Position numbers and translations under genes: made by a program. The notes below the pieces were generated by a model that was not told the origin of the DNA, did no database searches, and saw nothing but the letters and a program-made list of their open reading frames with translations. Positions 1 through 37,242 of a DNA stretch of 64,000 nucleotides are shown piece by piece (within the stretch, counting starts at the first letter, position 1; each line of letters opens with the position of its first letter). Source of the stretch: Schizochytrium sp. TIO01. Taxonomy: Eukaryota; Protista; Bigyra: Labyrinthulomycetes. The stretch is from NCBI GenBank assembly GCA_004764695.1, contig SMSO01000025.1, positions 1,488,001 through 1,552,000 of the forward strand, in the 5' to 3' direction.

Positions 1-3000
1 CGTTAAACGCGGATTCTTGACTGACAGCACTGGATTCAAGTGTCTCGATATCTTCTAGCGATTGTATATCTCCTCCCTTAATACGAAGCTCTCCAGCAAG
101 ACCATTTGTAGAAGACCCAGACTCTAATAAGAGATCCCCACCTTCTACACCTTCGCCGGCATTAATTGTGACAGATCCGCCCGTACTAAGGGCACTAGAG
201 CCTGCCTCTATAGACATAGAGCCACCTATGCTCGAGACACCAGTTGCACCTCCAGCGAGAAGACTAAAGGAGCCGCCATCTGATCGTCTACTAGAACTAG
301 ATCCAGCAGAGAGCCCAATGGATCCTCCGACACCCCCAGCTCCAGCAGCAATTTTCAGGTGACCTGCACTTCCACCTGATGGCGAGTCTCCAGCGAGAAT
401 CTGAATAGAACCGCTCTGAGACGTTGATTCACCTGCTTCCACGGTGATATTTCCAGAATCGCCACCGGTTGATTGACCTGTACGGAAAACCATACTCCCT
501 GAAGAACCACGAGCCGTACCAGTGGTTAGAGTCACTTTACCAGATAAAGATCCTGATGCATCACCAGTAGCAATTTGCAAATCTCCTGTGCTTGCTGATG
601 CAGATGTGCTAAGGAGAGCCGCACCAGATTGACCTTCATCAGCAGTGCTTTTACCTGAAGAAAGTACTAAATTACCGCCAACCCCGGTGTCAGCAGTAGA
701 AATACCACCTAAAAGAGAAACAGATCCGCTATTCCGACCAGACTGACCAGCCTTAATCTCTACATCTCCAGCCTGACCCACGGAGTCTCCAGAGTACAAT
801 GAAAGCTTTCCAGAAGCTCCAGAAGAAGACACCGAGCCAGAATGAACAATAACGTCACCACTGGCCAATCCAGCTGATGCTGCACTGGCCATTCTCAATT
901 GACCGGACGTATCAGACGAACTGCCTCCCGTTTCAATAACCACAGATCCTCCTAATGAACTGGCACTAGTTGTGTTTCCAGCTTTAATTGTGAGGGATCC
1001 TCCATCACCAGTGTTCGTACCTCCAGCAATTATATTGATGGAGCCCGCCTTGCCCCCTGAAGCCACGCCTGTAGCAAGGCTCAAATCTCCGGCTTTGCCT
1101 TCAATTGCTTTTCCAGTCGCAATTTCAATCGCACCTGAGCCTCCAACATTTTCAGTCGCAGCATTATAATAGTCCCCTGCATCAGCAGTGGAAATTCGCA
1201 ATGAGCCACTTACATCTGAGGAATCGACACCAATGGTAAAGCGCTTATGGATCACTTGGAGTGCGCCGACTAAATCAAGTGTGACAGCTTGCTTGTTTAC
1301 CTCGTGAAAATCTGCAATTGAGAAGTTCTTTTCCGGAAACGTAAGATTTTCAATAATGTTGACATACTCTGGGAATACGGTCTCAAGTTCCTGGGCGATT
1401 ACACCACGAACAACAGCGGCTTCTCCAAGTCCTCGAATAGCTCGCCATTGAGCTGTGTACTCATATTGTCGAAGTTCAATATTTTGCAAGCGGTGATATA
1501 CAGTTGCCATATCAGCATCAACAATGTTTTGTTTGATTCGTTGATCTGACGGATACATGATTGCAGTCGTCTGAATCGGGACATGCGAGTAGATTTCATC
1601 TTGGCGAACCCGAAATGTGATGTTGCCGTGAACCATGTTTTCAGTATTACCAATAGTAAATTCAGACTCCAGATTGGTGAATTCCATCCGAACGTCATTA
1701 CCAGGTTCGAAGACAATATCTTCACCTTCACTTGAGTTCAGACGAATACTACCATTACTAGATACTTCAATGCGAGGCTCAAATGACGCGTCCTGGATAG
1801 TAACCATGCTATTTTCATTATCCCCTGGACTGAGCACAATAGAACCACCAGATTTTCCGGTTCCAGCACGGAGTTCGATATCACCTGTATGACCACCAGC
1901 TGATGAACCTGTGCTGAGTATAATTGAGCCACTTGCTTTCACCGCAGATCCAGTTCTGAGCTCTAAGTCACCCGAACTCGAGCCGGAACTCCTGCCGGAA
2001 AACAACCGCAGTGCACCAGTCTTACCACTGTTCATAGCAGAAGACACCTCAATTGAGCCAGAGCTCTGAGGACCAGCACCAGATATAAGAGTAACCATAC
2101 CGCCCTCGCCCTCTTCAGAAATACCACCTTGCGCGAGAAGGTCGCCACCACTCGACAGTCCAGAGCCTTTGCCTGCATTCAACATGATATTGCCTCCAAG
2201 AGAAGAATAAAGACCATCACCAGCAGAGATGGATACGTTTCCCGGTTGCAATCCAGTTCCCGCAACAAGGTCTACATTTCCAGCTTTGCCCTCAGGAGAC
2301 TTACCACTGCTAATTCGAACTGACCCAGCAGAACCAGAGTCAGATGAACCCGAGCTGATAGTGATGTCTCCTGCCCGCTCTTCACCGTGGCCAGATTCTA
2401 AAGTAATTGACCCAGCCACACCTTCACTCTCACCAGTTTTAATCAAAGCAGAGCCCGACTCAGCTGAAGAAACCTTGGTGAAAATCGACACGTCACCGGA
2501 GCTCCCACCGGACGAGCTAGTACCGCTTGAAAGGCGTATACTACCTCCAAGAAGACCAGATATTGAATTGCCACCTTCAATCTGAATATCTCCACCATTA
2601 GAATCGCGAGAAGTTCCACCTGTCAGAGATATGGAACCTCCCATCGCTGCACTGCTCTCTCCGCCTCGTACATGGACGTTGCCGCCAAGACCAAGGTCAC
2701 TTTCTCCGCCCGACATTCGTAGCTCGCCGCCTGCAGTTTTGCCCGACCCACCGAACAATTGAACATCACCTCCTTGTTTCTGGCGGGAAAGCCCCCCTTG
2801 CAGACGAACCTGAGAGCCTACGCTATCACTTGCACCTGAAATGATCGCAATCTCACCTGCAGAAGCGCTCTTGGTATCACCTGAGGTAATCACTACGTCC
2901 CCACTTGATCCATATAATGAGTCTCCGGAAGCAATGCGCACACGACCTGAATTAGGGCTGTCAGAGGTAGCTTTGGCAGACCCAACGCTGACCGAAGCTG

Positions 3001-6000
3001 TTTTTGTTGAATCTTCCGAGGAACCCACTGTGAAGTGAGAATGTTGTTCCTGTAGGGCAGCAAGAATATCAATGATAAAAGCAACCTTATCGATCACATG
3101 AAAATCATCATACCAAACTCCTTGTTCTGGAACCCCCCACGCTTTGACAGAAACATACTCCGGGAAAACCTCCTGCAAGTCTTGCGCGATGACTCCACGC
3201 ACAAAACTTCCATCGTGTCGGCGTATCTTCGCCCACTCTTCAGTGTATCGGTATTTCCGAACTTCCACTTGTTGCAATCGTTGTAAGATCTCGTTTTTAT
3301 CAATACTTTGAATGTCACGTTTAATTCGACGATCTGATGAACTTTGAGTACTTGGAGTATGAAGTGGCACATGAGAATCAACCTCGTCATCCTCGATACG
3401 AAACAAAGTCTCATTTGCGGAGGACGACCAGAATCGTGTTCCAGATGTTGACCGGGCTTGAAAGTCAAGAATTCCGTCAGATGTGACATTAATGTCAGCA
3501 CCTTGTGCAGACATGAGCTGAAGCTTGCCATCATCAAATACAGTTACCACACTTTCTCCTCCCGAAGTTTGCATTTGGACTAACGAGTCTACTCCACCTG
3601 AAGAGAGGCTTACATTTCCACCAGAACCACTTGATGCAAGTCCACCTTTCAAATAAACGGACCCGCTTGCAGTATCAGCAGTACCACCAATAAGAACAAC
3701 ATCACCTCCAGTTGTAGCCGATCTGCCCGCGGATAATGTTACATCCCCACCTATAGATCCTGCACTTCTTCCTACCAGGATGTCAATAGACCCGGCTTTA
3801 TCAGCACCTGCCTCTGAAGTTTCAATCTGAATCTTGCCAGTATTTCCACCATATCCAGTACTAATAACGACATCACCTGATGTTTGCATGATACTCGAGC
3901 TAGCATCTCCAGATTGAACATACACCTGACCACTTGCTCCCAATGAGGAAGTGGCAGATGAAACCGAGACAGAACCGGAGGCACTCGTTCCTTCTCCAGA
4001 TGACAACGCAACCGACCCGCCAAAGCTATTCTCGGCAATACTGTCACCACCAGAAATATTGACAGTTGCACCATCCAGGGATTCAGCACTAGTACCAGGC
4101 TGAATAAATACGTTTCCAGCATTGCCCGCAGCTCCAGAGCCCAGAAGTATATTTCCAGACACGCCAGATGGAGCAATTCCGGAGGAAATGTTAACAAATC
4201 CAGATGTGGCACCTGGCGCTGCTGCTGATGCCAGACTTGCCGTGCCAGTGACACCCCCAGGAACAACAGAACCACTAAGAAGGTTCAGATTTCCTCCCAG
4301 AGTTCGTGCATCACCCGCAATGATATCAATGTTTCCGCCAGACATGTCCGAAGAGTTCCCAACACTGAGAGTAATGCCCCCGGCACTGCCACTGGTCGAC
4401 GAAGCTCCAGTGCTAAGTAAAATTGACCCTGATGAACCACTGATAGCCTTACCAGTAGTAATAGAAATGATTCCGGAATCTCCTTGGATAGTGTTTGCAG
4501 AAGAAACACGGACGGATCCCGAGTTTCCAGAAGCAATTGCAGAGCCACCCTGGAGGTTGACATTACCACCTGTACCAGAGGATGTTGAACTCGAGCCAGC
4601 CTTAATTATTACATCACCACCTAGCGCAGAGCTACTTTCTCCAACCTGAAGAATAAGAGAACCGGCTTGCCTGCCACCTCCTGCATTACCAGTTGAAAGG
4701 GTGACATTGCCACTATCTCCAGAACCAGCGACACCAGACCCAAGTAGCACACTTCCACTCGCTCCAGCAACAGAGCTACTCGTCATTATGTCTACGCCGC
4801 CACTAGAAGAACTGGAAGACGCTCCACTACGCAAGGAAAGAGATCCACCAGTCAGAACCGAGGAGCTACCGGCACTTAAGTATACTGAGGCGCCACTAGC
4901 AGTTTCTGAGAGCGATGCTCCTGCATGAATGTCTATATCACCAGCTGAACCAAGACTTGAATTTCCGCTAGAAATCTGAATATCTCCTGACCTTGCTTCA
5001 TTCTGTGAAACTGCACCTGATACCAGGGATATCATTCCTGATGCAACCCCAGAAGAATTTGTACTTACAAAAATAGACCCACTACGCGCAGACTCTGCAC
5101 CACCACCGGAGGTGAGGTAAATATTACCGCCCGAGTTACCAACAGAGGCTGTTGCGCCGGATGTGATTTTCACATCACCGCCATCACTACTTTGTGCGAG
5201 GCCCACTTTGAGTTCAAGGTTCCCAGGTACACCTGCACTAGAAGATCCAGTGGTCAAAAAGATACCACCACTTGAGCCGTCTCCGCTAGATCCAGTAGAA
5301 ACTAGAATGCTCCCAGAGTCTCCACGAGGAGAGAAACCTGTTTGAATGGAGACCGCACCAGAAGAGCCAGGTGCACCACCCTCCGCTGAAGCAATATTAA
5401 CTGTACCGCTGTTGCCTTCAGAAGCATAACCGGAATATATTGAAACTTGGCCACCAGTGACATCGTCAGCGTTAGATGTAGTATTACCAGCAAATAAGGA
5501 AACATTTCCCCCACTACCAGTGGATGCGACACCAACACCAATATCAATGCTACCTGCAGAACCGCGAGAAGAGTCTCCGGTTCTCAAGGAAATAAAACCA
5601 GTGTCTCCAAAGGAAGCTGTGCCTGTCTGCAAGGTAATAGCACCTGACACGCCATCGGTACCTGCATTAGGAGTATTGATTGAAACATTTCCACTTGACG
5701 TTGCCTGGCTTGAACCACTCTCTAACAATACTGATCCACCAGGTCCAGCCACGGAGCCAACCTGTGCACCAGCAGAAATGCTTAATGAGCCGCCCACGCC
5801 AGAATGTCCTTCGCCCACACTAATCTTTACATCGCCGGCACTTCCACGACGGGAATTACCAGATCCAATTGAAACTGATCCAGAGCCTCCATTACTTGCA
5901 TAGCCCGAAGTAAGATTCAAAGATCCAGACGATACACCATAAGATGAAGCAATCACAACATCTCCCGAAGTCAAAGATCCTTCACCGGACAATATTCTCA

Positions 6001-9000
6001 CTGCGCCACCGACACTGCTTTCTTTGGTTGCATTACCACCAGCAATAAGAACACCAGCACCTGTGGCTGCGTTCATTGATTTACCAGGAACAATGTGGAT
6101 ATCCCCTGCTTGTCCAGAAAGAGCATCTCCAGTACTGAGAAAGATGCTGCCAGACATTCCAGACGAGGAATCCCCAGTTGCGAGTGTTAAGAGTCCTGAG
6201 GTTCGACTGGATGCTCCTGTCTGAATCACAATATTACCGCTCTTTGATTCAGAGCTTGACCCTGACTGAACGGTGATATTGCCCCCTAAAGACCTACGGG
6301 AATGTCCAGAAATGATATCAACATTTCCGCCACGAGAGGTGGTCAGACTAGATCCTACAGAAAAGCCTGCGCCTAAATAAAGGTCACCTCCTCCGTCCTC
6401 TCCAGAGCCAGCAGTAACATTGAGGGAGCCACCTTTACCATCAGCAGATGAACCTGATTCTAGCAGAATCTCTCCTCCCTGGCTAGATCCACTTGACCCA
6501 ACAACCAATGAAATAGAACCAGAAGAACCTTCTGTAGACGAACCTGACTGAATATTGACATCTCCACCATTTCCGTAATTTGCTGCGCCACTTGAGATCT
6601 CAACACCTCCACCATTGTGATCTGACGTAGCATCTCCAACAGAAATTACAATACCGCCCGAGGAACCTCTTCGGCCAGCACTAGGAGTAGTGAGAAGGAT
6701 CTGACCGCTTGAAGACATGGTTGATCCTCCAGAAGTAATTTGAATACCGCCGCCTGTTCTTGATAAGGAAGCTGTGTCTGAAATCTGTTGGCCAGCAACC
6801 ATCATGATCCCAGATGCCTCCCCCGACGCAGAGCTTCCTACGTAGAGATTGATCGAGCCAGATTTCTTCCCAAATGAATCCCCAGTGGAAAACTTCAAAT
6901 CGCCTGTGTTACCTTGCCCAGAGCCAGAATGAATAGAGACAGACCCGGTTCCTCCTACTGTAGTGCTACCACTTCCAGCAGATGCGATCAACACATCCCC
7001 AGATTGTCCAGACAGAGTTTTAGATACTCCAGATTCAATACTGACGCCACCTCCGGATTTGGAGGCGCTTGACCCAGCGTTAATAGATACAGACCCACCA
7101 AGATCTGCACTGGATCCAACGCTTAAGGTGATCCCACCAGCAGATGCACCCAAAGCATCGCCTGTAATTAACTCGATAGCACCAGAGGAGGCTTCATTAC
7201 TTGCGCCTGTTGTCAAAGATACAAAGCCAGAGCTCATTTCGGCATGGGCAGTATCTAGAGTTAAAGAACCAGAAGATAAACCGCTGCTGGACCCAGTCAA
7301 GAGAGAAATAGATCCACCCGGACGAGCACCCATAGCAGATCCAGCTTGGATTTGCACGTTTCCGCCGCCGATGGAAGTACTTGATCGCACTGACTCGTCG
7401 TTACCAGCTCGGATTGACACGCTTCCACCACCTCCTTGGATCTGACCAGAACTCACCCCACTTCCAGCAGCAAGGGTCAGATTACCTCCTGTCACCGACC
7501 CAGTTGAATTTCCAGCAGTAATATTCACACTTCCACCTGAGACAGCCCTTCCTGCCACGAGCTCGACAGAGCCACTTGAACCATCTGAGGATTGACCTGT
7601 AACGGCACTAAAGCTGCCAGAACCAGCAACGGCATCAGAAGTGGATAAAGAAATACCACCAGAAGAGTGTGAACTGCCAGCAGATGATGTTTTAATGTTC
7701 ACAGACCCACTGTCACCATTGCCGCTAGAACCTGAAACCAAGCTGATTGATCCACCGGTAGACTTCCCGGAGTTACCAGCTTGAACAGATACTGAGCTTC
7801 CAGCACCACTTTCAGAAGTACCAGCCTCCAAGGAGATACCTCCAGATTGCGTCAAGCTAGAACCTGTACGAATGTAGATTGCGCCACCAAGACCAGAGTT
7901 AGACATACCAGTTCCAAGATAAATGTCACCACTTGATCCGGTAGAACTAGGTAAGTATGATGCAGTTGAGATGTTGATAGCTCCGCTAACTCCAGATCGA
8001 CTGCTACCAGAGAAAAGCTGAATGTGACCACCTGTACTGGATGTATCTGTCGTGCCACCTGCCTGAAGAGCAACGTTTCCACCAGGACCCTCAGAAGAAC
8101 TACCAACTATAAGCGAAATGTATCCAGCCACTCCATCAGCGCTTGAAGAACCAGTCTCAAGCTTGATGGAGCCAGTATCTCCACGCGCGGCATCTCCAGT
8201 CAAAAGTGACATGCTTCCACTATTACCGACCAGACCTGGCTCCACTGTACTAATTAAAATATGCCCACTACTTGATCGCAAGCTCCCGCCAGACGAAATA
8301 ATGACACTTCCACCAGTCTCAGAAGCGCCATCACTATAACCGGCCGCCATGGTGAGGTTTGCACCAACTTCCCCTTTACTTGCACCAACATGAATATTGA
8401 TTTCACCAGCAACACCAGAACTCGTCACAGCACCAGTATATATTCCAACTGAACCAGTACCACCATATGTAGTGCCACCTTCTCCTGTGGAAAGGCTTAT
8501 AGTGCCGCTTGAGCCGTACGTCCCTCCTGCTTGGGTGGAAATAGAAACATTTCCGCTTGTCCCAACGACACTAGAGCCGCCTTGAATAAAAACGCTTGAT
8601 GCTACACCACTTGAGACAGACCCAGCTGTGATAGAAACGATACCAGATGTGCTCTCACTTGCGCTAAGCCCTTTCCCTGGCTCTATAAATATACCACCGC
8701 TTTGTCCAGATGTTGACGCACCAGTTTTCAAGTGCAGGGAGCCACTGCCGATAGAGTTGCCTTCTCCAGTAGAGAGAAGGATCTCGCCGCTTTGCCCCGC
8801 AGATCCTCCTGCAGCCGTGACGAGCTTCACAGTACCACTGTTTGATCCTGAGCTAGCTCCTGATACTATTTCTACGTCTCCACCTGGAGATGATGAACTA
8901 GTGTTTCCAGCTGCAATGTACACTTGACCACCTTGTCCAGAGTCCCCTGGACCAACAGCAAGGCGAATCTCTCCGCCATGACCAGAAAATGCAGTTCCAG

Positions 9001-12000: not shown

Positions 12001-15000
12001 GTGCCAGTGCTTAATTGAATAGCGCCAGAGTCACCTGAGACACCCCCCTTGTGAGTTTGGATACTGATCGAGCCACTGGTGGTTGATGCTGAAAAGCCAG
12101 AAACTAAAGACACAGAGCCGCCGGTTGTTCCTGAGGCGCTCGTAACATTCCCTGCATTAAGTCTAATGTCTCCACCTGGACCAGCCACTCCAGAACCAAC
12201 TTGAAGCTTGATTCCGCCACCTGCAGTCTGAGCAGACCCAGTAGTGAGGGCAATAGAACCAGACTCGCCCCGGGAAGCGACTCCTGTCTGAATATTAACT
12301 TTTCCAGAAACACCGCCAATATCCCCAGAGCCAGCATCTGAGGTCTTCAAGAGTATTCCACCACTCGAAGTCTGAGAAGAAGCTCCTGATGTGATCTTGA
12401 TAAAGCCTCCAGTACCTTCGCCCGTGGTCCTACCAGCTGTCAAAGTAATATTATTTCCCTGACGATCACTAAAGGAGGTACCAACAGATAAATTTATAGC
12501 GCCTGCTAGCCCATCATTACCATCAGCATCCCCAGTTTGTAGAGACACTTCTCCAGAGATGGAATCATGGGCAATTCCTGAAGTTATCATGATAGCTCCA
12601 CTGGAACCTGCTTCCCCAGCCTCTGCAGATGCGATTTGAATACTTCCACTTGTGGTATCTACAGACGCGCCACTCACAATCATTACAGAGCCACCCGTTG
12701 TCTCCTCTGCTGAGCCTCCATAGACGAGCACATCTCCGGACTCGCCATCGACAGTTTTACCTGGCCTTAAGACTATAGAGCCAACGTCCCCGGTTTGGGC
12801 CGAACCAGTTTGAATAGTAACTTCGCCTGTTATACCAGAGTCTGACGCGCCAGTACCAATCAAAACATCCCCAGTTGCTACAGAAGAGCTTCCCTCAACA
12901 TCGGCAGTTGTCAAATTGAGTTGTCCAGAATGGCCATACTTTGATGTCCCACTTTGAATAGCAATTGAGCCGCCGTGACCCTGCCCTGATGCATGGCCTG
13001 CCTTGATAGTAATATTGCCTCCACTCTTCAATGAACCTGCGGAGGCTCCTGACAAAAGAACTACGGATCCACCTTGCCCTTGCGCAGTGGAGGTACCATT
13101 GCCTGCTGCAAGGAACAAGTTACCGGCATGATGCGCTACGACTGTACTCATAGAGTTACCAGCGGTAATCTGCACATCTCCAGCATCTGCAACACCTGCA
13201 GAGCCCACCGCGAGAATGATACTTCCGGACTTTCCACTTTGAGATGTACCTGTTCGCAATTCTACAGCTCCGGAGGCTGCAGTCTCCGAAGCAGAGCCAG
13301 AGGAGATGCTAACTCGACCGCTCCCAACTTCCGAAGCTCCACGCGTACGAAGTTCGATTTCACCACTTGCACTCATAGCACTTGCGCCTGAAAGAATTCT
13401 TACCGCACCTCCAGTTTGGGCAGATTTTGAAGTGGCGTTACCGGCGATTAATGTGACATTTCCACCGCGTCCAGAATTGCCTGTTCCTACTTGGAACAAT
13501 ATAGCGCCACCTGCACCTTCACCCGCAGAGCCTGTACTGACTGAGAAAGAACCAGATGTTGCACTGTTAGAATTTCCGGTGGAGATTTCTACACTGCCAC
13601 TGGAGCTATCATCATTCGACGAATTTTGGGTGCGAATGTAAATGCTTCCACTGATACCGTCCTCAGATGAGCCAGTCAACAGAGAAATATCACCACCGAT
13701 ATCCCCGGTTGAATTTCCTGCTTGTAAGTCAATGCTGCCTCCTCGCCGTGCACCAGTACCAACCTGAATCGAGATACCACCTCCTGCTCCAGAGACCGAA
13801 GATCCTGTCTGAAACACCAGTTGACCTGAACTGGCCCCGACCGTGTTTCCGGTGGAGAGAGATATCACTCCGCTTGAAGAAGATGCTTGCGACGTTGATG
13901 CTGTAGCTAGAGATACATTGCCGCTTGGAGATTGCGACGAAGATCCACTTACAAGTCGAATGGATCCTCCTGTTTTTCCAGAAGCAGTCGTTGTGTTACC
14001 GGCAGAAATTTCGACATCTCCTCCGGGTCCAAGTTGTCCAGTACCAACTCCGATACGAATACCTCCAGACGTACCAGACACTGCATTCCCTGTGTTTAAT
14101 ATTATGTCCCCAGAGTCCCCACCAGTACTTCGGCCAGTGAAGATCTCTACAACGCCACTGGCGCCGTCAGATCCACTGCGAGCACTGAAGATAGTAACAT
14201 TTCCACTTGTACTCTGTGCGCTGTAGCCAGACCCCAAGATTAAATTGCCACCTGTTAAACCATAGCGAGAGGATGTATTTCCTGCTTTGAGAATAAGATC
14301 AGCACCTACACCGGACATAGAAGCACCGACCTCGATACCAATCTCCCCTGCCTTGCCATCCACACCATCGCCTGTCACTAAACTGATTGAACCTGCGTTG
14401 CCTGCTGTGGCGTTTCCAGTGGAAAGCAATATTGATCCTGATTCACCACCGGTAATCCCACCGGTTGGAGTACGAATGATGATCTCACCACTCGTTGTAC
14501 GTGCTGATGCTCCAGACTCCAGAATAATATTGCCGCCAGTAGCAAGGGACTTTTCATTTGCCAATGACGTACCGCCAGCTGAAAGCCAGATATTGCCTCC
14601 GGGCCCGGATCCTGCAGTTCCGACCAGGATGGAGACATTTCCGGTTGAACCTTCTAGCGCATCTCCTGTGTGCATAAGCAAGGAACCCGATGCACCATCA
14701 GTTGCAGAACCAGTAGATATGGTTAACTCCCCAGAAGTTCCATCGAGGCCTGCATCTGCAGTAGCCACGGTGATAGCACCACTTGAAGTAGCACCGCTCT
14801 GCCCACTGCGAATAGTAACGTTTCCACCTTTTGCAGTTTGAGCATCACCACCTAGAATCAAAACATGACCACCAGCCACAGTAGATTTGCTTTTTCCTTG
14901 AGCACGACCACCAGAAATCTTAATATCTCCACCGTCGCCATCGCCTACTTCGTTTGTGCTTAGGCCTGCACCGGCAGTAAGGACAATGTCACCACCTTGT

Positions 15001-18000
15001 GTTCCTGTAGTGTTACCTGCAGACAAAAGGATCGAACCACCGTCTTTCAAAGTACCAGCGCCAACTACCATTGAAATGTTTGCACTAGTCTCCGCATTTC
15101 CCGTACGAAGAATGATTTCACCAGCAGCACCATTAGAGGCCGTCCCTGTGATAAACTGAATAGCGCCGCTATTGCCTCGTATACTTGCTGCAGGTGCAGA
15201 TTCGATATAAATTGACCCGCTACTCGATGCATCAGACTGACCAGATCGGAGGCGAATGGACCCACCAGTACCGCCAGACAAGCCCATACTACCAGCACGG
15301 ATCGTAACGTTTCCACCGTTTCCAGTTGCACCCTTTCCAACTGTGATGTTAATATTACCACCATGACCACCTGCAAGAGAATCTCCTGTCGTAATCGTAA
15401 AGTTGCCCGAGTCTCCAAAGGATGCAGCTCCAGTGACCAATTGCATGTTTCCAGACACCCCCTTCAAACCAGCGTTGGCAGAGGCAATTGTAACATTCCC
15501 GCTGGAGCCACCTGCACTCCGACCAGAAATCATGGTAAGGTTACCTCCATACCCACCTTGAGAGAACCCAGCAGCAATATAGACTTCGCCACCGACGTTC
15601 TTCGTGTCATCAGATCCCAACGTAGCACCGGCACGAATTATAATCCGGCCGCCATAACCAGAGCTTGCGTCTGTGTTATTTCCAGCAAAAATCTCAACTG
15701 GGCCACCGTATTGGCCTTCGGCTGTAGTATCGCCAGCTTTAAGTCGAATTCGACCACCTGTGCCAACTGTAGCTGATCCAACACTTAGATCAATGCGACC
15801 ACCAGCACCACTCTTCATTGCATCGCCTGTGTTCAGAACAATAGCGCCAGACGTACCCTTGGTTGCAGTACCAGTCGAGAGTTGAATGGGTCCACTTGTC
15901 CCACCCAGACCGGTTCCACCTGTAGGGGTCATAATCGAGATGGCACCCGATGAGCTTGTGGTCCCTTCACCACTTGTAATGCTAATGAACCCCCCAGTGA
16001 AGCCCGGAGCGGTGGTATTTCCAGCCCGGATTTCAACGTTACCACCGCTGTATGTTTGGCCTGTACCAACCAGCAAGCGGATGTTGCCACCGCTGCCACC
16101 AGTTGAATTTCCTGTGAGAATATCGATACCTCCAGATGACTGGCGGGTACCAAAGCCAGTTTCTAGTTTAATGTAGCCGCTGCGTCCGCTAGTTCCTGAG
16201 TTGGAGGTCTGAATGTTGACAAAGCCACTATCAGCGCCTGCACTGAGACCTGTCATCATTGAGATCGACCCCCCTGTACCTGTAGCAGAGTTTGATCGAC
16301 CCGCAGTCATTAGGATGTTGCCACCACGGCCAGAATCACCTGTTCCAATACTCATGATGATGTCCCCTCCATGCCCATCTGCGGCGTGACCAGTGGTCAC
16401 GTTGAAAGAGCCAGATGAACCTGCTTGTGAATTGCCTGTGGTTAAGGTCATAGCCCCGCTGACACCATCAGGTCCAGAGTTAGAGGTAAGAATAGTAACA
16501 GAACCTGAGGTTCGGGAGCTGCTTTTGCCCGTGGCCATATAGATCTGCCCACCCGTACCACCTGTACTGGAACCGCCGTTCACATAGATACTGCCACCGT
16601 CATTGGCACGACTCTGTCCAGCAGCAAGACCAGCAGTAATATTGATATGGCCTCCAGATCCACCATTCGTACGGTCATTTGAAAGACCATGCCCAGCTTG
16701 GATTTTAATAGGTCCACCACGAGTTCCCTCGGTAGTAGTATTACCAGCTACAAGGGTGATGTTGCCACCCTTCGAGAATCCGCTGCCCGATCCAGTACCC
16801 ACTTGGACTATAAAGCTGCCACCACGACCGTCCATAGAGGTACCTGTGGTAAAAGAATAAAGACCTGAGTTGCCTGATGAAGTAGTGCCTGTTTTAAATT
16901 GGATGGAACCACTGACACCTTCTTTGCCAGCATTTGGCGTTGAGATCCAGATGTCACCACTCGAAGAATAGGAGCTTGCGCCAGAGGTGACAGTTATGGA
17001 GCCTCCGGAGACCTCATTTCTGGAGTCAGTAGTATTCCCTGCCATGAGGTAGACGTTGCCACCGCTGCCAACAGATCCAGAACCGACTGTCATATTAAGA
17101 TGGCCTGCTTTCCCGTCCATAGCTGCGCCGGTTTCAATGTGGATGTAACCAGAATCACCTTCACTTGCGGTACCAGTACGAAGGATCATACGTCCAGAGA
17201 CACCGGCTGAGCCAGCATTGGCAGTTTCCAACACAAGCTCGCCACTACTGCGTTGAGAGGAGTAGCCAGTTGCCATGAGAATAGAACCACCAGTTCCCCG
17301 CACGCTCGAGCCTGCATTCAGCGTAATATTTCCACCTCGATCTTGAGAGTTCAAGCCAGCAGCATGTCCACCATACAAATGAATATCTCCACCATCTCCT
17401 CCGTTTGAGCTAGAAGATGAGCTACCTTCACCAGCACGAAGTTCTATGCTTCCTCCTTGTTGGGCTGCCTTGGTAGTTTCACCAGCAGTGATCAGAACGT
17501 CACCGCCATCCTTCTGATTACCCCGACCAACAAATAGTTCAATGTTTCCACCTTTACCACCTTTGGCATCTCCAGAGCGCATGCGAACAATACCAGAATC
17601 GCCATCAGTACTGTGACCAGTTACAAGAGATATGCTACCAGAGACACCATCTTTGCCCGCATCGGCGGTAGAGATGTTAACACGTCCACTTGAGGTTTCT
17701 CGTCCAAAGCCAGTCGTGAGGAGAATAGATCCACCGCTGCCCTTATAAGCTTGACCACCAGTCAGATTCACGTATCCACCAACATCATTCTCGTCTTCGC
17801 CGAGTGCTTCACCACCAATGATGGTCACATTACCACCATCACCACCATTAGTCCCATCGTCACTAGAGCCAAGTCCACCTCGGATTTCGACATACCCACC
17901 AGCTTTCTTATCTGCAGTAGACTCGCCAGCAATCAAGCTGATGTAGCCACCGTTTCCTGAGTTTCCCTGCCCAACTTGAACTGTGAAGGATCCACCATGG

Positions 18001-21000
18001 CCAGATGTTGCTTTTCCTGTGTCGAATGAAATTTCGCCAGTACTACCTTTACTAGAAGTGCCTGTTTCAAAATGCATAGCACCACTAACTCCCGATTTTC
18101 CGGCATTTGGTGTGTTGAGATAAAACGACCCGCTTGATGTTTCGGAGGAGTATCCAGTTTTCATACGAATCTCACCTCCACTTCCTTTCTTCGCTGTTGT
18201 GGTGCCTGATGTTACATAAATGTCCCCTCCAGAGCCGGAATTACCCGTACCAACGAGTAGTTGAATATTTCCAGCATTGCCATTGTTCGCATTGCCAGTG
18301 GTAACATAGTACGCTCCAGACGGCCCATTGGTTGAATCACCTGTAGCAAGAGAGATGGAGCCCGAAACACCCTTAGTGCCCGCATCGGCTGTACTAATGA
18401 CGATATGTCCACTAGTCGTTGCCTTGCTAAAGCCAGATGTAAGTAAAATATCACCACCAGTTGCCTGGCGAGCGTAACCAGCTTGCAACTCAATATTTCC
18501 TCCTGTGTCGTATGAAGAAGTGCCTTGGGCTGCTCCACCATATATCTGGACCTTACCACCATTGCCACCATCAGAAAAGTCAGTACTTGAGCCCTCGCCA
18601 GCTGTGAGAACAATATCACCTCCAATCGTTGCTTTATCTGTAGCCTCGCCAGCAGTGATGAGAACATCACCACCATTTCCACTGTGGCCAGTTCCAACAT
18701 AAAGGCGAATGTCACCTCCATGCCCTTCATTGGCCTCTCCTGTGCCGAGAGCGATCATACCTGAGTTGCCGTCACTTGTGGTTCCTGTACTGAGTGAAAT
18801 GCCACCAGAAACACCAATAAGACCTGCATTTGGTGTACGGAGGGAGAAAGATCCGGAGCTCGTCTGAGCAGAGTATCCAGTTGTCATGGAGATATAACCA
18901 CCAGAAGCTCCGGAAGAGTCAGTGGTAGTACCTGCAGATATAGATACGTGTCCACCTTCTCCATAGTTACCAGTTCCAACAAAAAGGTTGATAAAACCTG
19001 ATTTTCCGCCCATGGCCTTGCCTGTCTCGATTGAAATAAAACCACTATTGCCTAGGCTTGTTGTTCCCGTGGACAACGTCATTGCTCCGCTGATACCAGA
19101 GCTTCCTGCGTTGCTTGTGTCAATGATAATGTGACCAGAGCTTGTACCCGTTCCGGTACCGGAGGTGATTCGCATAGAACCACCCGTGCCAGCAAACGAG
19201 CGACCTCCATTAATAATTACGTCACCACCAGCATCAATGGCAGCAGTGCCGCGGGCTTCTCCACCATAAATCCCTACATAGCCACCATCACCACCATCAG
19301 CCGAGTGCGCACTTGCTCCTTGGCCCGCTCGAATCTCGACGGCACCACCAGCACTTGCGGCATCCAGACTCGTGCCTGCGGTGAGCAGGATAGCACCACC
19401 ATCGCCCATGTCACCAGTACCCACAGAGAGAACGATATCTCCACCTTTACCGTCAGTGGCATATCCTGTTTCCAACGCCATTGTTCCAGAGTCTCCGGCA
19501 GTAGCAACACCAGAACGAAGCACAACATCACCGCTTACACCGCTCGTGCCAGCATCCGAGGAAGCCACTAGAACCGACCCACTCGAGCGCTCAACACCAG
19601 CACCTGATGTAATCGAAATTGAACCGCCATTACCACCGGCTGAAACACCACCTGCAAGCTCAACGTTACCGCCAGCATCTGATGTAGAGCGGCCTTTAGC
19701 TTCGCCACCAACGAGTCGAACTAGACCGCCATTGCCGCCATTGCTGAGGTCATTGTCACTGCCCTCACCACCAGAAATGATAACCCGACCTCCAGTAGCA
19801 GCATTAGACTTGGCAAGACCAGCAGCAATAATGATATCGCCACCGTCTCCTTCCTCAGATGTTCCGACTGCAATGCTAATGTCTCCTGCAGTACCATCGT
19901 TTGCGGCCCCTGTAGTAATAGATATAATGCCTGAGTCTCCAGCTGAGGTAGTCCCAGTGCTGAGAGTGATGGACCCAGAAACTCCAGCAGGTCCTGCGTT
20001 CGATGTGAAGATTGAAACGCTTCCACTTGATGTTTCTGTACCGACTCCGCTTCCAAGGATAATATCACCACCGTAATTGTTAGTACTTTCACCGCCTTGG
20101 AGAACGATGGCGCCACCAGGTGAGTCAGAAGAAAAACCACCGATCAGATAGACTTCGCCACCACTGCCTGCAGATCCTCCAGATGAGGCATCGCCTCCAG
20201 CATCTCCACCACGAATGATAACATCTCCTCCACTTCCTCCGTTAATAGATGAACCTGTGCCTGCAGTGAGCTCAATATTACCTCCAGTGGAGTCATCCTC
20301 GGTAGAGTCACCAGCACTAAGACTAATAGAACCACCGGTTCCAGAGCCCGAAGTGCCAATACTGATGCTCACAGAGCCTGATTGTCCGGTACCCTGAGCA
20401 GACCCACTCGCAATGACAATGTCGCCAGCAACACCTGAACCGGTGTCACCGGTCTGAATAGTGATTGATCCAGTACCTGCACTTGAGTCATCACCAAGGC
20501 TTGATGCAGTAAGTACGGAAACTCCACCTGAGGACGAGTTACGCGCTGTTCCACTTTCGATGGTAATATTACCCCCAGACAAGCTTGGGTCAAGAGTGCG
20601 ACCAGCCTGGAGGGATAGGTCACCACCACGACCGGAGGTACTTAGACCAACTGAGATAGATATGGCTCCTCCTTGACTTGAAGATGAGTTTCCAGACACG
20701 ATTTGAATTGAACCTGCATCCCCAGCAACAGCATTGCCTGTGTTAAGGTTAAGCTGGCCGGAGGATCCTGCAGAAGCCGATTCAGCAGAGGTAAGGTAGA
20801 CATCACCAGAACCAAGGCCCAGACTCGTGCCACTCTCGATATGGATATCTCCACCTGGTCCCGCTTGTGCCGATCCACCATATAGAAGTAGATCACCTCC
20901 TGAATCAGATGTACCAGACCCGTTGGCTACACCTCCGGTGAGCTGTACGCTTCCACCTCGCTGACCGTATCCGCCGTCAAGCCTGATGGCACCACCAGAA

Positions 21001-22460
21001 CGGGTTGCTTCAACAGCTCCTCCTGCTACAAGTTCAATATTTCCACCATGTCCGCTTGTTGTGGCAGTTCCAACACTAAGCAAAATACGTCCGGGCATCT
21101 CACCATCCGCATCGCCAGTCTCGAGCACAATGGAGCCGCTTGGCCCATCAATTGCTGATCCAGTGAAGAGATTGATTGAGCCTGATGATCCGCCTGAGGG
21201 ACTGGAGTTGGCACTCATAATGGTGATGTGGCCTGAAGAAGAACTGTCACTAGCACCAGAGGCAAAAATAAGGTCTCCACCAGTCGCAGCAAACGCTTCA
21301 CCTGCAGTGATTTCTACGTTGCCACCTGTGTAGACACCTGCCTCTGATGCAAGAGTCTTGCCAGCCTGAAGGCGGAGAGAACCAGGTTGCAGAGCGGCAT
21401 CACCAGTAGAGAGAAGGAGGCTACCAGAGTTACCAGATGAGGAGCTTCCCGATGTAACACGGATATGACCAGATAGGTCGATAGCATCTGCAGAGGCAAT
21501 GCTAATTCCACCGCTAGTAGTGCTCTGGCTTGCTCCAGAGAGGAAATCAAGACGGCCGCCGGTTGCGTGAGAAGAGTAGCCTGCACGCAAGATAACCCGT
21601 CCACCAGTTGCATCTGTCGATGAGCCTGCTACTAGTTCCACATCACCACCAGTGCCGGCACCACCTTGAGCAGTGGTACCAGCACCGGTGCCAGCAGAAA
21701 GTCTAATGTGTCCTCCTGCGCCGCGGTTATAGTTGAGGCCATCACCAGCGTCAATGGTGACATCACCACCACGCTCATTGACCCCTGTGCGGTTTCCAGC
21801 AGTCACATTGACGTCTTCAGCAGATTGCAAAACCAGTGCTGTGTCAGTGAGGCTGAACTCAAATTTGTTGCCAGTCTCATCGGCTTCGCCAGACACAGAG
21901 ATGTGTCCGCCGCCAAATACTGGATCAGGCTCTACCACAAGATTGCCAATGACTCGGTTGATACCTACAAAGGATGCTGGACATGGCGGGTCAAAGACTG
22001 TTCCGCGGCATCCGTTGGAAAAAACTTCTGTGAGAATCATACAGGAGCTCTCCGAAGGGCACCACGCACAGTCTTCATGAGACGCACAAGATTCGCAATC
22101 ATCAAATTCACCGCAAGCCGGAGGAATAGGACAGGAGTCCTGTGGCCCAAGCCAGTCAGGGCAAAACGTGCCATTGTCAGTCGGGCCATATTGATCTCCG
22201 CCAACGCAACGAAGGGTAGATAGACAGAACCCACATCCTGGAGTTTGAAGGCACGGCATACAAGTATTTTCAATTTCGTACCAGTATGGATTGTCACCTG
22301 TGCTTTCGTGTACGGCACAGGCACTGTTGGAATCGCCATCAACAGCGGCGATGTTCATGAGTGCAAGAAGAGCAAACATGCCCAAGAATGTATGGCGCGG
22401 CTTCAGGGTATGAGGCCGTCCATTCGCGTAAATTTGGGAACTTTTATGGATTCGCGACAT
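1..22460 (-). CDS. Giant secreted Gly/Ser-rich repeat (beta-solenoid fibre) polyprotein with 2 PSI-like domains and at least 2 internal Peptidase S74/ICA domains; one frame break at ~9027; 3' end outside the window
   Basis: ORF 9024..22487 (4487 aa) starts at TTG; the first ATG is at 22460 and a second at 22379. It ends GAA GGG TAA, but the +1 frame continues in repeat register (..STGNSTEG|NSGGIQLSTGTAFSGHGGEIRLAVG..). I read that frame as open from 9025 to base 2 (..ETLESSAVSQESAFN). The track lists no terminated ORF in that frame, consistent with no stop before the window edge. Confidence 0.9.
1240..1549 (-). other. Peptidase S74 / ICA domain 2 (MYRF-like)
   Basis: Manual translation: MYPSDQRIKQNIVDADMATVYHRLQNIELRQYEYTAQWRAIRGLGEAAVVRGVIAQELETVFPEYVNIIENLTFPEKNFSIADFHEVNKQAVTLDLVGALQVIHK. 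Ser codon 1547-1549, Lys codon 1532-1534, same frame as ICA 1. Confidence 0.9.
3040..3337 (-). other. Peptidase S74 / intramolecular chaperone auto-processing (ICA) domain 1
   Basis: Manual translation: SSSDRRIKRDIQSIDKNEILQRLQQVEVRKYRYTEEWAKIRRHDGSFVRGVIAQDLQEVFPEYVSVKAWGVPEQGVWYDDFHVIDKVAFIIDILAALQEQH. It has SDxRxK (Ser codon 3335-3337, Lys codon 3320-3322) and the G[VFL]IAQ[DE]..vfPe.V motif. Confidence 0.9.
21978..22319 (-). other. Two tandem PSI-like (plexin/semaphorin/integrin) Cys-rich domains
   Basis: TCMPCLQTPGCGFCLSTLRC...CPDW...CP and DCESCASHEDCAWCPSESSC...C...CP match the PSI pattern CxxC-x(4-5)-C-x-[WF]-C-x5-C. Confidence 0.75.
22335..22388 (-). other. Signal peptide/hydrophobic leader of the giant protein
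   Basis: FLGMFALLALMNIAAVDG follows basic residues (KPRH) and directly precedes a Cys-rich extracellular-type domain. Confidence 0.7.
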
Positions 22461-36435: not shown

Positions 36436-37242
36436 TCAGCGCATGTATGAGCAGTCGAGGAGCTGTCCATCAAACACAAAGTAACCGCGGCAATCCTGGC
36501 GGTCAAGTACTGCTGGGTACCACACCTCATCGTCAGCAGGCATTGACGCAAATGGAATTTTATCCCGTGGCCACCACTCTAGTCCAGGAGCTGGCTCCTT
36601 TTTCACTTTGGCAACTGCCAAGAACTCAAACTCAAGGATTGGATCGCCATGCAGCTCGAAAAAGTCCATCACTCCATATAGTTGAGGCGGTGTCGTTTCG
36701 TCCAGCTTAATGTTTGGGTCAAAACCTTGCACAATTTTATGAACTGTCTCAGGGGTTGCAGCGTCAAGCGAAGGGACACTCTTAATGAGACCTGTCAGAC
36801 GCCCAGCGAAAGGTCCCTCACGGTGTCTGTGCAACAGAACATGCTCTTGGGTAGGATCAAGAACCAGAGCTTGGACAAGAATCTCTGTATCGTGCTCTTG
36901 AAAGGGCTCGCTCATGGAGATCTCTACGCCCATCTCCATGGCCATTTCAATAATCTCAGGAGATGGCTCCGCAGTACATGTCAGGCAAGTACCTTCTAGA
37001 GATGATTTTGACTCACGCAAGCTGGCTCGAGCCCTCGAGAGAGCTAATGCTGCTAGCGAACTTTGTACCTGCGTCAACTCACCTTCATGCTCGCGGACTC
37101 CGGGTTCACTTCGCGCGATACTAAGAACGCGTTGGGAGGTGCCTCCTACACGAGACACCACAGCTGCTGCTGGCTGCGATGCTTGTTCACGTGCCGAAAT
37201 ACCAGCGGCTTGAGCGGCGAGCTTGCGAACTGCGGTCCTCAT
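36436..37242 (-). CDS. NUDT1/MTH1-like Nudix-fold protein with a degenerate Nudix box and possible mitochondrial presequence
   Basis: 268-aa ATG ORF. VLLHRHREGPFAGRLTG and WWPRDKIPFASMPADDEVWYPAVL..RGYFVFDG align with MTH1-type VLLG.KKRGFGAG.WNG and WF....IPF..MW.DD..W.P..L....GYF.F.G. The N-terminus is rich in Arg/Ala/Ser. Confidence 0.7.
   Translation of the reverse strand: MRTAVRKLAAQAAGISAREQASQPAAAVVSRVGGTSQRVLSIARSEPGVREHEGELTQVQSSLAALALSRARASLRESKSSLEGTCLTCTAEPSPEIIEMAMEMGVEISMSEPFQEHDTEILVQALVLDPTQEHVLLHRHREGPFAGRLTGLIKSVPSLDAATPETVHKIVQGFDPNIKLDETTPPQLYGVMDFFELHGDPILEFEFLAVAKVKKEPAPGLEWWPRDKIPFASMPADDEVWYPAVLDRQDCRGYFVFDGQLLDCSYMR

What the first reader, a model, noticed from the sequence alone, without database searches (positions are those of the whole stretch)
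1..22460. Candidate new system: a >7,400-aa secreted, self-cleaving fibre polyprotein with tandem internal intramolecular-chaperone autoproteases
Seen: a signal peptide, 2 PSI-like domains, about 6,100 aa of Cys-free G/S-rich repeats, then ICA1, ~500 aa of repeats and linker, ICA2 and at least 400 aa of repeats, still open at the window edge. Both ICA domains keep the Ser and Lys of SDxRxK. The ORF track misses the whole ICA-bearing half. Established: Peptidase S74/ICA domains trimerise, template folding of the trimeric beta-helix N-terminal to them, then self-cleave just before the Ser. They are known as single C-terminal domains of phage endosialidases/tail fibres and in the eukaryotic transcription factors MYRF and Dictyostelium MrfA. 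Inference: a eukaryote uses several internal ICA domains to fold and cut one precursor into trimeric fibre segments. Predicted products are ~6,370 aa (PSI-tipped), 596 aa (Ser-to-Ser, 1788 nt) and a third of at least 516 aa. These could be an adhesive filament, wall/scale or extrusome material. I do not know of a description of this architecture.
Basis: partly seen in the sequence, partly recalled or inferred. Interest (0 to 1): 0.95.

Follow-up and report, generated by a model that had tools for sequence, protein, structure and literature searches.

The report
Giant protist fibre with internal autoproteases
The stretch is the first fifth of one intron-free gene of about 105,000 bases in a marine protist, whose secreted product of roughly 35,000 residues is built like a bacteriophage tail fibre and carries two intact self-cutting 'chaperone' domains in the middle of the chain, not at its end, an arrangement I found described in no paper.

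Summary
On the minus strand a Met at 22460 is followed by a signal-peptide-like segment. Next come 16 Cys in two PSI-like modules, one above Pfam's cut-off and one below. About 6,100 Cys-free residues of 15-residue Gly/Ser repeats follow, then two neck+Peptidase_S74 (ICA) cassettes with Ser codons at 3337 and 1549, 596 aa apart.

The apparent frame break at 9027-9049 is an error of this assembly. Contigs of four public runs each lack one base there, which gives an open frame.

The gene is far larger than reported. Repeat-coding frames run on for about 83 kb beyond the window edge to a stop at C24:1405272-74, about 35,060 codons in all, with no further ICA. The predicted third product is therefore about 28,000 aa, not 516 or more.

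- A three-copy model of repeats+neck+ICA1 scores 0.91 against a best control of 0.25.
- A model of the repeat unit resembles only chains of triple-stranded beta-helix phage fibres, and weakly.
- Relatives in other protists also have internal ICA cassettes. In two of them the downstream copies lack the Ser, so cutting at every ICA is inferred, not shown.

The scan had already met this gene on adjacent DNA (s1-831048, s1-847192).

Verdict: a real feature and a new variant of a known kind.

The parts
22332..22460 (-). Start codon (Met at 22460) and signal-peptide-like N-terminus: about 25 basic or polar residues, then a 16-residue uncharged hydrophobic segment.
   Evidence: Translation. The open frame begins at 22532. 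The contig of run X20 ends at about 22565, roughly 105 nt upstream of the Met. No signal-peptide predictor was available, so this reading is an inference.
22131..22319 (-). PSI-like module 1 (8 Cys)
   Evidence: Cys positions. Pfam PSI scores 18.2 bits, E 0.003, below the cut-off of 23.1.
21981..22115 (-). PSI module 2 (8 Cys)
   Evidence: Pfam PF01437 scores 27 bits, E 5.6e-6, and 23.8 bits when scanned alone. Both are above the cut-off.
3527..21935 (-). Shaft 1: about 6,100 residues of Cys-free Gly/Ser/Thr-rich repeats. The basic period is 15 aa, with super-repeats of about 94, 148 and 240 aa.
   Evidence: Composition, autocorrelation, register, and 57 paralogous units aligned as A1. AF2 model: pLDDT 83.7 with no intrachain secondary structure. 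The only PDB look-alikes are triple-stranded beta-helix phage hyaluronidase fibres, Z 2.4-3.8. Three uncultured tailed-phage proteins match in BFVD at E about 1e-5. Pfam and PHROGs find nothing.
9026..9027 (-). One surplus base in this assembly. It creates the false stop at 9024-9026 and the apparent frameshift.
   Evidence: In one search runs X17, X20 and X13 leave out 9026 and run X1 leaves out 9027. Both versions restore the same reading, Gly-Asn. The site is GGG in three runs and GGT in one, so the assembly looks like a merge of two alleles.
3338..3526 (-). Neck 1: a non-repeat beta-rich segment before ICA1, ending ...SHVPLHTPSTQSS.
   Evidence: Low-Gly island. Aligns with the necks of ICA2, P0001 and P0002. 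PHROG 1980 (tail fiber protein) covers repeats, neck and ICA, E 8.6e-20.
2987..3337 (-). ICA1 (Peptidase_S74). The Ser codon is at 3337-3335 (residue about 6375), with the Lys five residues on (SDRRIK).
   Evidence: Matches the MyRF ICA 7dc3 at E 4.6e-7, with the Ser and Lys on MyRF positions 587 and 592.
1823..2986 (-). Inter-ICA segment: a short linker and about 350 residues of the same repeats.
1550..1822 (-). Neck 2
1190..1549 (-). ICA2 (Peptidase_S74). The Ser codon is at 1549-1547 (residue about 6971), SDQRIK. It is 40% identical to ICA1.
2..1189 (-). Start of shaft 2. The repeats run off the window edge and continue on contig C24 down to 1405275, about 28,000 residues. They end in a non-repeat domain of about 100 aa that contains Cys.

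Best explanation
Window 22460->2 (minus strand) is the N-terminal fifth of one intron-free gene of about 105 kb (about 35,060 codons) in an intron-poor marine protist.

The product enters the secretory pathway. This is inferred from the signal-peptide-like start and from the Cys-rich extracellular-type PSI head.

Three chains are brought into register by two internal Peptidase_S74 intramolecular-chaperone (ICA) domains at residues about 6375 and 6971. The 15-residue Gly/Ser repeats then fold as an intertwined three-chain beta-helix, like a phage tail-fibre shaft. By geometry this gives a filament of the order of a micrometre.

Both ICA domains keep the Ser-Lys dyad. Each trimerised ICA therefore most likely cuts its own chain just before its Ser. 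Three products would result:
- a PSI-tipped fibre of 6,374 residues (about 0.2 um);
- a 596-residue piece that begins with ICA1;
- a distal fibre of about 28,000 residues that begins with ICA2.

Shown here: the domains, the dyads, the open frame across 9027, purifying selection, and homologues with the same cassette.
Predicted only: the trimer and the triple helix.
Inferred only: secretion, cleavage, the single 35,000-residue chain beyond the window, and the cellular role (adhesive, wall or surface filament).
For: - S74 appears twice, well above the cut-off. The dyad is aligned to MyRF S587/K592, whose mutation abolishes cleavage (PMC8326128).
- Four runs restore the frame at 9026/27 and show no joints in 4200-10199.
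- Of 28 strain differences in 4200-10199, 24 are synonymous, in the proper frame on both sides of the junction.
- The homotrimer model scores 0.91 against a best control of 0.25, with pLDDT 84 and 95% or more of contacts shared between runs. Its interface is nearly continuous over residues 20-182, which are repeats and neck.
- The repeat-unit model has pLDDT 83.7 and no intrachain strands. It matches only HylP1/HylP3-type triple-beta-helix chains and tailed-phage proteins.
- The only non-repeat islands in about 35,000 residues are the head, the two neck+ICA cassettes and the C-terminal domain.
- The repeats are homologous from one end of the locus to the other.
- Relatives with internal cassettes exist: P0001, P0002, P0005 and P0159. 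104 cluster representatives reach E <= 1e-10.
- The chromosomal neighbours are cellular genes.
Against: - No cleavage, secretion or fibre has been observed.
- The trimer pass may come from the model's memory of solved ICA trimers, as itself warns.
- The structural matches of the repeat are weak (Z below 4), and four of the five AF2 models were less confident than the one kept.
- Beyond the window the frame changes at C24:1464404-503, 1456026-110 and 1415195-444, and many times within 1436770-1439224. Three of these are 1-2 nt indels relative to in-frame paralogous copies.
- The runs labelled 'RNA?' are only guessed to be RNA, so transcription is not shown.
- Relatives with Ser-less downstream ICAs show that cutting is not the only reason to keep an internal ICA.
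Confidence: 0.6

Rival explanations
1. The internal ICA domains act mainly as trimerisation and register-setting nodes. One or both do not cut in vivo, and the mature product stays one continuous three-chain filament of about 35,000 residues per chain.
For: In P0001 the cassettes read SDKRIK, ADERIK and DDTRIK. In P0005 they read SDRRIK and ADSRIK. Among the ICA copies found in 153 related cluster representatives, 6 have Ala, 2 have Asp and 2 have Glu at the Ser position. Ser-to-Ala blocks cleavage in MyRF (PMC8326128), and that S587A protein was crystallised (7dc3 holds three chains).
Against: Here both copies keep the Ser and the Lys although they are only 40% identical to each other, so the duplication is old. 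In 105 copies of the family the Ser is present.
Confidence: 0.25
2. The 105-kb locus is not one gene. The distal part, beyond one of the frame changes and especially the garbled zone C24:1436770-1439224, is a second gene or a decaying repeat array. The window would then hold most of a smaller protein.
For: There are at least five further frame changes and a 2.4-kb zone with many shifts and stops.
Against: - The one junction that could be tested is an assembly error.
- Three others are 1-2 nt indels against in-frame paralogues that are 92-95% identical. Polishing of long-read assemblies tends to fail in such sequence, which is my general knowledge.
- No start, signal peptide, head domain or other non-repeat island occurs anywhere between ICA2 and the final C-terminal domain.
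- The frame after ICA2 is open for 8,382 further codons in any case.
Confidence: 0.2
3. Each chain folds on its own into a single-chain beta-solenoid of 15-residue coils, as in insect antifreeze or ice-nucleation proteins. Only the neck and ICA regions are trimeric.
For: A 15-residue period with one Ile/Leu-x-Ile/Leu strand is compatible with short-coil solenoids, from my own knowledge. The structural matches to triple helices are weak.
Against: The confident AF2 monomer model has no intrachain strands at all, which a solenoid would show. The three-copy model places nearly every residue of the upstream repeats in the interface. The family's known role is to fold triple beta-helices (PMC8326128).
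Confidence: 0.15
4. It is a fibre gene of an integrated virus (a polinton-like or giant virus), not a cellular gene.
For: S74-tipped fibre proteins of up to 3.9k aa are common in polinton-like viruses of protists (PMC12220804). The repeat model matches phage proteins.
Against: The gene alone is 105 kb, larger than the 14-40 kb elements. Its flanks are ordinary cellular genes. It is held nearly identical by 20 runs of 11 studies. The PSI head is a eukaryotic module.
Confidence: 0.04

Closest known systems
Phage tailspike and tail-fibre C-terminal intramolecular chaperone domain (endosialidase endoNF of phage K1F, GA-1 neck appendage, T5 L-shaped fibre; Pfam PF13884 / MEROPS S74)
   Same: The same domain family and the same Ser-x4-Lys dyad. 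It lies directly after a neck and a repetitive beta-helical shaft. A trimer is predicted.
   Different: In phages the domain is single and lies at the very C-terminus. All 12 PHROG matches place it in the last part of the profile, most at its very end. There it is discarded after cutting. Here two copies sit at about 18-20% of the chain length, with about 28,000 residues after them. The protein is cellular, eukaryotic, carries a PSI head, and is 10 to 30 times longer.
MYRF / Dictyostelium MrfA (membrane-bound transcription factors with an ICA domain)
   Same: A eukaryotic protein with an internal ICA. It is the closest solved sequence (7dc3, E 4.6e-7). Cutting releases the N-terminal trimer.
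   Different: There is no NDT80-type DNA-binding domain and no transmembrane segment after the ICA. The protein is luminal or extracellular, not cytosolic. There are two ICAs, and a huge shaft on both sides.
Fibre proteins of polinton-like viruses of protists, with single S74 copies often at the C-terminus (PMC12220804)
   Same: S74 on large modular fibre proteins in a protist setting.
   Different: Those are viral, reach at most 3.9k aa, carry one ICA that is often terminal, and are built from laminin-G or collagen modules. Here the gene is cellular, the ICAs are internal and tandem, and the shaft is an unnamed Gly/Ser repeat family.
Streptococcal phage hyaluronidase fibres HylP1/HylP3 (2c3f, 6wv2, 2wb3), triple-stranded beta-helix
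   Same: Three of the only four solved chains that the repeat-unit model resembles.
   Different: Z is only 2.4-3.8 at 9% identity. No lyase function is implied.
Other giant proteins (titin, about 35,000-40,000 aa; giant bacterial surface proteins, bioRxiv 10.1101/2023.11.21.568195)
   Same: Comparable length, if the locus is one gene.
   Different: Unrelated folds and roles. This one is intron-free and secreted.

Membership tests
Peptidase_S74 / ICA (PF13884) | Match to the family HMM above the curated cut-off | tested here: met
   86.4 bits against a cut-off of 22, with two stretches. 59.2 and 43.3 bits in the genome search.
Peptidase_S74 / ICA (PF13884) | Catalytic Ser and Lys five residues apart (endoNF S911/K916, MyRF S587/K592) | tested here: met
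   SDRRIK and SDQRIK. They align to MyRF 587 and 592 and to the family alignment. The residue roles come from PMC8326128.
Peptidase_S74 / ICA (PF13884) | Homotrimerisation of the domain | tested here: inconclusive
   Prediction only. ipSAE is 0.91 against a best control of 0.25, with pLDDT 84. The pass may reflect the model's memory of solved ICA trimers.
Peptidase_S74 / ICA (PF13884) | Triple beta-helix immediately upstream | tested here: inconclusive
   The interface is nearly continuous over the upstream repeats and neck. The monomer model has no intrachain strands and resembles only triple-beta-helix chains, at Z below 4.
Peptidase_S74 / ICA (PF13884) | Autocleavage before the Ser | not testable with these tools
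   This needs protein chemistry.
Phage-type arrangement of S74 | A single domain at the C-terminal end, released after folding | tested here: not met
   Two copies lie at residues about 6375 and 6971 of about 35,060. There is no S74 at the C-terminus.
MYRF/MrfA | NDT80-type DNA-binding domain before the ICA, and a transmembrane segment after it | tested here: not met
   Pfam finds only S74 and PSI. There is no non-repeat island between ICA2 and the C-terminal domain.
PSI domain (PF01437) | HMM match above the cut-off with the 8-Cys pattern | tested here: met
   Module 2 scores 27 bits and 23.8 bits when scanned alone. Module 1 scores only 18.2 bits. Each has 8 Cys.
Polinton-like-virus fibre | Encoded within a viral element of 14-40 kb | tested here: not met
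   The gene is 105 kb and its neighbours are cellular.

The most novel reading that the evidence does not exclude
One polypeptide of about 35,000 residues, among the longest known, is made from a single exon. It is assembled three chains at a time, and the two internal, catalytically intact ICA domains work as early register-setting nodes. They appear after the first fifth of the chain has been translated, lock three neighbouring nascent chains together, template the PSI-tipped shaft behind them, and seed zipping of the 28,000-residue shaft that follows. They then cut the filament into defined pieces. The cassette would define an undescribed, widespread family of micrometre-scale extracellular filaments in stramenopiles, alveolates and their relatives, derived from viral fibres.
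Probability: 0.35. Interest if true: 0.9.

Novelty: new variant of a known kind. Interest (0 to 1): 0.8.

Why it matters
ICA domains are known as terminal, throw-away folding aids of phage fibres and as the release switch of one family of animal and slime-mould transcription factors. Here the same device sits twice inside a secreted cellular protein of a protist, with enormous repetitive shafts on both sides. That raises a question that can be tested: how do three chains of tens of thousands of nearly identical repeats find their register?

It also offers a possible natural way to make defined micrometre-long protein filaments. If the locus is one gene, the protein rivals titin in length.

Relatives occur in oomycetes (Phytophthora), dinoflagellates and many environmental sequences. 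All are unnamed, so a whole class of protist surface or matrix filaments may be uncharacterised.

On the practical side, the case shows that gene callers and ORF tracks miss such genes. It also shows that a long-read assembly can put false frameshifts into them.

Tried and rejected
- Intron at 9027-9049: rejected. The 'GT...AG' there would span only about 20 nt, and four runs simply lack one base.
- Pfam and PHROGs on the repeats, the N-terminal 320 aa and the C-terminal 180-500 aa found no family beyond PSI.
- Foldseek against the PDB with the repeat model found no match.
- AF2 of the C-terminal 180 aa without an alignment gave pLDDT 45.5 and is unusable. The ESM Atlas gave only unnamed phage clusters (0.91-0.93) and H_lectin at 0.84 for that domain, which are leads only.
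- A search for orthologues of the PSI head among proteins of 2,463-7,836 aa found nothing. Given the length filter this says little.
- Seven literature searches and look-ups in three papers found no description of internal or tandem S74 domains in a cellular secreted protein.
- Expression could not be settled. The runs that hold the stretch are only guessed to be RNA, and they are contigs.
- The cap on read laying (one call) prevented testing the other frame changes.
The frames were searched apart, and residue numbers across the junction were obtained by arithmetic only.


Full report
**1. What is in the window**

The minus strand carries two very long open frames. One runs 22532->9027 (4502 codons). 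The other runs 9049->2 (3016 codons) and is still open at the window edge.

The first Met is at 22460. It is followed by about 25 basic or polar residues and a 16-residue uncharged hydrophobic segment, which looks like a signal peptide. No predictor was available, so that is an inference.

All 16 Cys of the first frame lie in residues 72-184, as two blocks of eight. The 3016 residues of the second frame contain none.

Pfam finds PSI in the second block at 27 bits; that block scanned alone as a 57-aa piece gives 23.8 bits. The cut-off is 23.1. The first block reaches only 18.2 bits.

The rest is Gly (22-25%), Ser, Thr and Ala-rich sequence with a dominant period of 15 residues. The pattern is roughly G-G-x-I-x-L-x-A/S/T-G followed by six small or polar residues. 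Super-repeats of about 94, 148 and 240 residues are also present.

Pfam finds Peptidase_S74 twice in the second frame at 86.4 bits, E 1.6e-24. The Ser codons of SDRRIK and SDQRIK are at 3337 and 1549.

**2. The frame break at 9027-9049 is an assembly error**

The two frames overlap by 23 nt and differ by one base.

I laid contigs of four public runs from four studies on 4200-10199. Three of the runs are guessed to be RNA and one DNA. Every run leaves out one base, at 9026 in three runs and at 9027 in one. None shows a joint anywhere in the 6 kb.

Either deletion gives the same reading, ...S-T-E-G-N-S-G-G-I-Q..., which fits the repeat register. The Gly codon is GGG in three runs and GGT in one. 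The assembly's 'GGGT' therefore looks like a merge of two alleles.

Of the 28 single-base differences between these runs and the window, 24 are synonymous third-position changes, each in the proper frame on its side of the junction. The sequence is therefore a coding region under purifying selection and is continuous across 9027.

Counting from Met 22460, the two Ser are residues about 6375 and 6971.

I did not submit any joined sequence to a tool. The frames were searched apart.

**3. The gene is far larger than the finding**

The window is C24:1488001-1552000. The frame that holds both ICA domains is open for 10,882 codons.

I fetched 120 kb beyond the window edge (downstream in the gene). 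Gly/Ser/Thr-rich frames continue on the same strand through these stretches:
- 1464503-1456026 (2826 codons);
- 1456110-1439224 (5629 codons);
- a garbled 2.4-kb zone;
- 1436770-1415195 (7192 codons);
- 1415444-1405275 (3390 codons).

The last frame ends in a non-repeat domain of about 100 residues and a stop. From Met to stop is 105,186 nt, or about 35,062 codons.

A repeat unit from the window finds homologous units in every one of the frames that yielded a full-length match (A, B, D, F, G), with E down to 1e-20 and below. The distal arrays contain very young copies, with a 217-aa period at up to 90% identity.

In the six long frames the only stretches poor in Gly are the head, the two neck+ICA cassettes and the C-terminal domain. 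An HMM of the cassette finds no third copy.

The frame changes at three junctions are 1-2 nt indels relative to in-frame paralogous copies that are 92-95% identical. That is the same kind of defect as the one shown to be an error. I could not test these junctions because read laying was capped at one call. 'One gene of about 35,000 codons' is therefore likely but not shown. The open frame after ICA2 is in any case 8,382 codons long or more.

**4. Context**

The flanks carry ordinary eukaryotic genes as long uninterrupted ORFs:
- presenilin, an OSCA/RSN1-type channel, a protein kinase, a dual-specificity phosphatase and a DnaJ-PH protein on the upstream side;
- unrelated non-repeat ORFs on the downstream side.

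The genome is 64 Mb in 37 contigs. Twenty runs from 11 studies hold the stretch nearly unchanged. It is a resident cellular gene, not a viral island.

**5. Family membership of the ICA domains**

Besides Pfam, the closest solved sequence is the MyRF ICA (7dc3, E 4.6e-7). The window's Ser and Lys fall on MyRF positions 587 and 592. The crystal is the S587A mutant, which is why it shows Ala there.

PMC8326128 states three relevant facts. S587A and K592A abolish cleavage. These residues equal S911 and K916 of endosialidase endoNF. Trimerisation of the ICA is a prerequisite for cutting.

PHROG 1980 (tail fiber protein) aligns over repeats, neck and ICA together, E 8.6e-20. In all 12 phage families matched, the ICA lies in the last part of the profile, in most at its very end.

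ICA1 and ICA2 are only 40% identical. The duplication is therefore old, and both copies have kept the dyad.

**6. Fold and assembly (predictions)**

Three copies of residues covering 170 aa upstream plus ICA1 gave ipSAE 0.91 (median of three runs) against 0.25 for the best of three controls. The pLDDT was 84, and the runs shared at least 95% of their contacts.

That mark was reached by 21 of 30 proteins solved as pairs of one chain and by 0 of 23 proteins solved as single chains. The calibration used two copies, and on eukaryotes a pass may come from memory.

The interface is almost continuous from residue 20 to 182, that is, through the Gly/Ser repeats and the neck. This is what intertwined chains give. 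Three solenoids lying side by side would not give it.

I also ran an AF2 monomer model of a 245-aa repeat unit, using 57 paralogous units as the alignment (A1). It reached pLDDT 83.7 and pTM 0.69, although four of the five models were less confident. It has no intrachain secondary structure at all.
- Foldseek found nothing in the PDB.
- The wide VIA search found only four chains with Z of 2 or more. Three are streptococcal phage hyaluronidase fibres (2c3f, 6wv2, 2wb3), which are triple-stranded beta-helices. The fourth is a Streptomyces hyaluronidase. Z was 2.4-3.8.
- In BFVD three uncharacterised proteins of uncultured tailed phages match at E of about 2e-5 to 5e-5.

Taken together these favour a three-chain beta-helix, weakly.

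Geometry gives a rough length, and this is my inference. If each 15-residue unit adds one strand layer of 4.8 A, then 6,100 residues span about 0.2 um and the whole shaft about 1.1 um. If a unit made a full turn, the lengths would be three times as great.

**7. Relatives**

A word-index search with the two-cassette region found P0001 (1767 aa, NCBI) and P0002 (2635 aa, EukProt) at E 1e-126 and 4e-105.

An exhaustive HMMER search with repeats+neck+ICA1 found 418 cluster representatives, 104 of them at E <= 1e-10. Most are short fragments, and the match usually covers the neck and the ICA.

Several have repeats on both sides of the ICA: P0002, P0014, P0015, P0034, P0073, P0102 and P0159.

Two have tandem cassettes. 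P0001 has three, reading SDKRIK, ADERIK and DDTRIK. P0005 has two, reading SDRRIK and ADSRIK. In those relatives only the first cassette can be expected to cut.

The repeat alone has relatives in a Phytophthora fragariae secreted protein, in a dinoflagellate gene model, and in proteins where it alternates with Kringle domains. The ESM Atlas lists an S74 cluster that is 83% eukaryotic, mostly Oomycota. None of these proteins has a name.

**8. How it most likely works**

I commit to the following at about 0.6 confidence.

1. The chain enters the ER.
2. When ICA1 and ICA2 emerge, after 18-20% of the chain, three chains trimerise through them.
3. The upstream repeats fold back from the neck as a triple beta-helix, as in phage fibres. 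This gives a PSI-tipped fibre of about 0.2 um.
4. The trimerised ICAs cut before Ser 6375 and Ser 6971.
5. The 28,000-residue remainder, which begins with the ICA2 trimer, zips up behind it and ends in a small C-terminal domain of unknown fold.

Shown: steps 2-3 rest on family membership. Predicted only: the trimer. Inferred only: cleavage, direction of folding, secretion and the cellular role (adhesive, wall, scale or hair filament).

The main rival, at about 0.25, is that one or both ICAs are kept as non-cutting register nodes, as the Ser-less copies in relatives suggest.

The other rivals are these:
- The locus is two genes or is partly decayed (0.2).
- The repeats are single-chain solenoids (0.15).
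- The gene is viral (0.04).

**9. Comparison with what is known, and novelty**

ICA domains are described in these settings:
- as single C-terminal domains of phage tailspikes and fibres;
- as an internal domain of MYRF/MrfA (PMC3742443, PMC3828593, PMC8326128);
- as single copies, often at the C-terminus, of fibre proteins of up to 3.9k aa in polinton-like viruses of protists (PMC12220804).

Seven full-text searches found no account of internal or tandem ICA domains in a secreted cellular protein, nor of this repeat family.

It is not a MYRF member, since it has no DNA-binding domain and no membrane segment. It does not have the phage arrangement, since the ICA is neither terminal nor single. 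I class it as a new variant of a known kind.

The scan had already met the same gene on adjacent DNA. Note s1-847192 described an S74 domain followed by more than 21,000 aa. Follow-up s1-831048 described the last fifth of a gene of about 105 kb and 35,000 residues. My extent figures were computed independently and agree with these.

**10. Limits**

- Expression is not shown, because the 'RNA?' label of the runs is a guess and contigs cannot show transcripts.
- The distal frame changes are untested.
- The C-terminal domain could not be modelled.

Noticed in passing
L020:2257-5193 (-) = G000:C36 about 3324256-3327192: An ATAD3-like AAA ATPase (Pfam ATAD3_N plus AAA) has a signal-peptide-like start and a Peptidase_S74 domain (SDERLK) at its N-terminus, before a long coiled coil and a hydrophobic segment. 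I do not know of an ICA domain in front of an ATAD3-type protein.
   Followed up: partly
L018:4008-5258 (+) on C34; L019:4769-8491 (-) on C6: Two smaller secreted-looking proteins (417 and 1241 aa) have the canonical phage arrangement of one C-terminal S74 with Ser and Lys. They share the motif A-W-C-x(3-5)-G-[DE]-C right after the hydrophobic start. Other readers noted them as well (s1-831094, s1-839314).
   Followed up: partly
window 9026-9030: The false frameshift sits where strains differ (Gly codon GGG or GGT, and a synonymous GAA/GAG at 9030). The assembly seems to have merged two alleles into one extra base. Other frameshifts in this assembly may be of the same kind.
   Followed up: yes
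G000:C24:1436770-1439224 (L010): A 2.4-kb zone inside the repeat array has at least eight frame changes and several stops, flanked by near-identical repeat copies. It is either a badly polished collapse or a real lesion that splits the locus.
   Followed up: partly
G000:C24:1439224-1464503 (L008-L010): Very young tandem repeats with a 217-aa (651-nt) period, up to 90% identical at the protein level. These are much younger than the diverged repeats in the window, so the array is still expanding distally.
   Followed up: partly
P0154-P0156 (proteins from JGI and Logan assemblies): Relatives of the repeat shaft in other organisms alternate with Kringle domains (PF00051). This is another animal-type extracellular module grafted onto the same shaft.
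   Followed up: no
P0160: A Durusdinium trenchii model named alanine--tRNA ligase carries the same Gly/Ser repeats. It is probably a chimeric gene model.
   Followed up: no
L014:7275-7580 (-) = C-terminal about 100 aa of the gene: A non-repeat C-terminal domain containing Cys, with no Pfam or PHROG match. ESM Atlas look-alikes are unnamed phage clusters (0.91-0.93) and H_lectin (0.84). It may be a fibre-tip binding domain.
   Followed up: partly
window 33560-35404 (+) and 36436-37242 (-): ORFs of 614 and 268 aa with no Pfam family at E <= 1e-5. The first was flagged by another reader (s1-849737).
   Followed up: no
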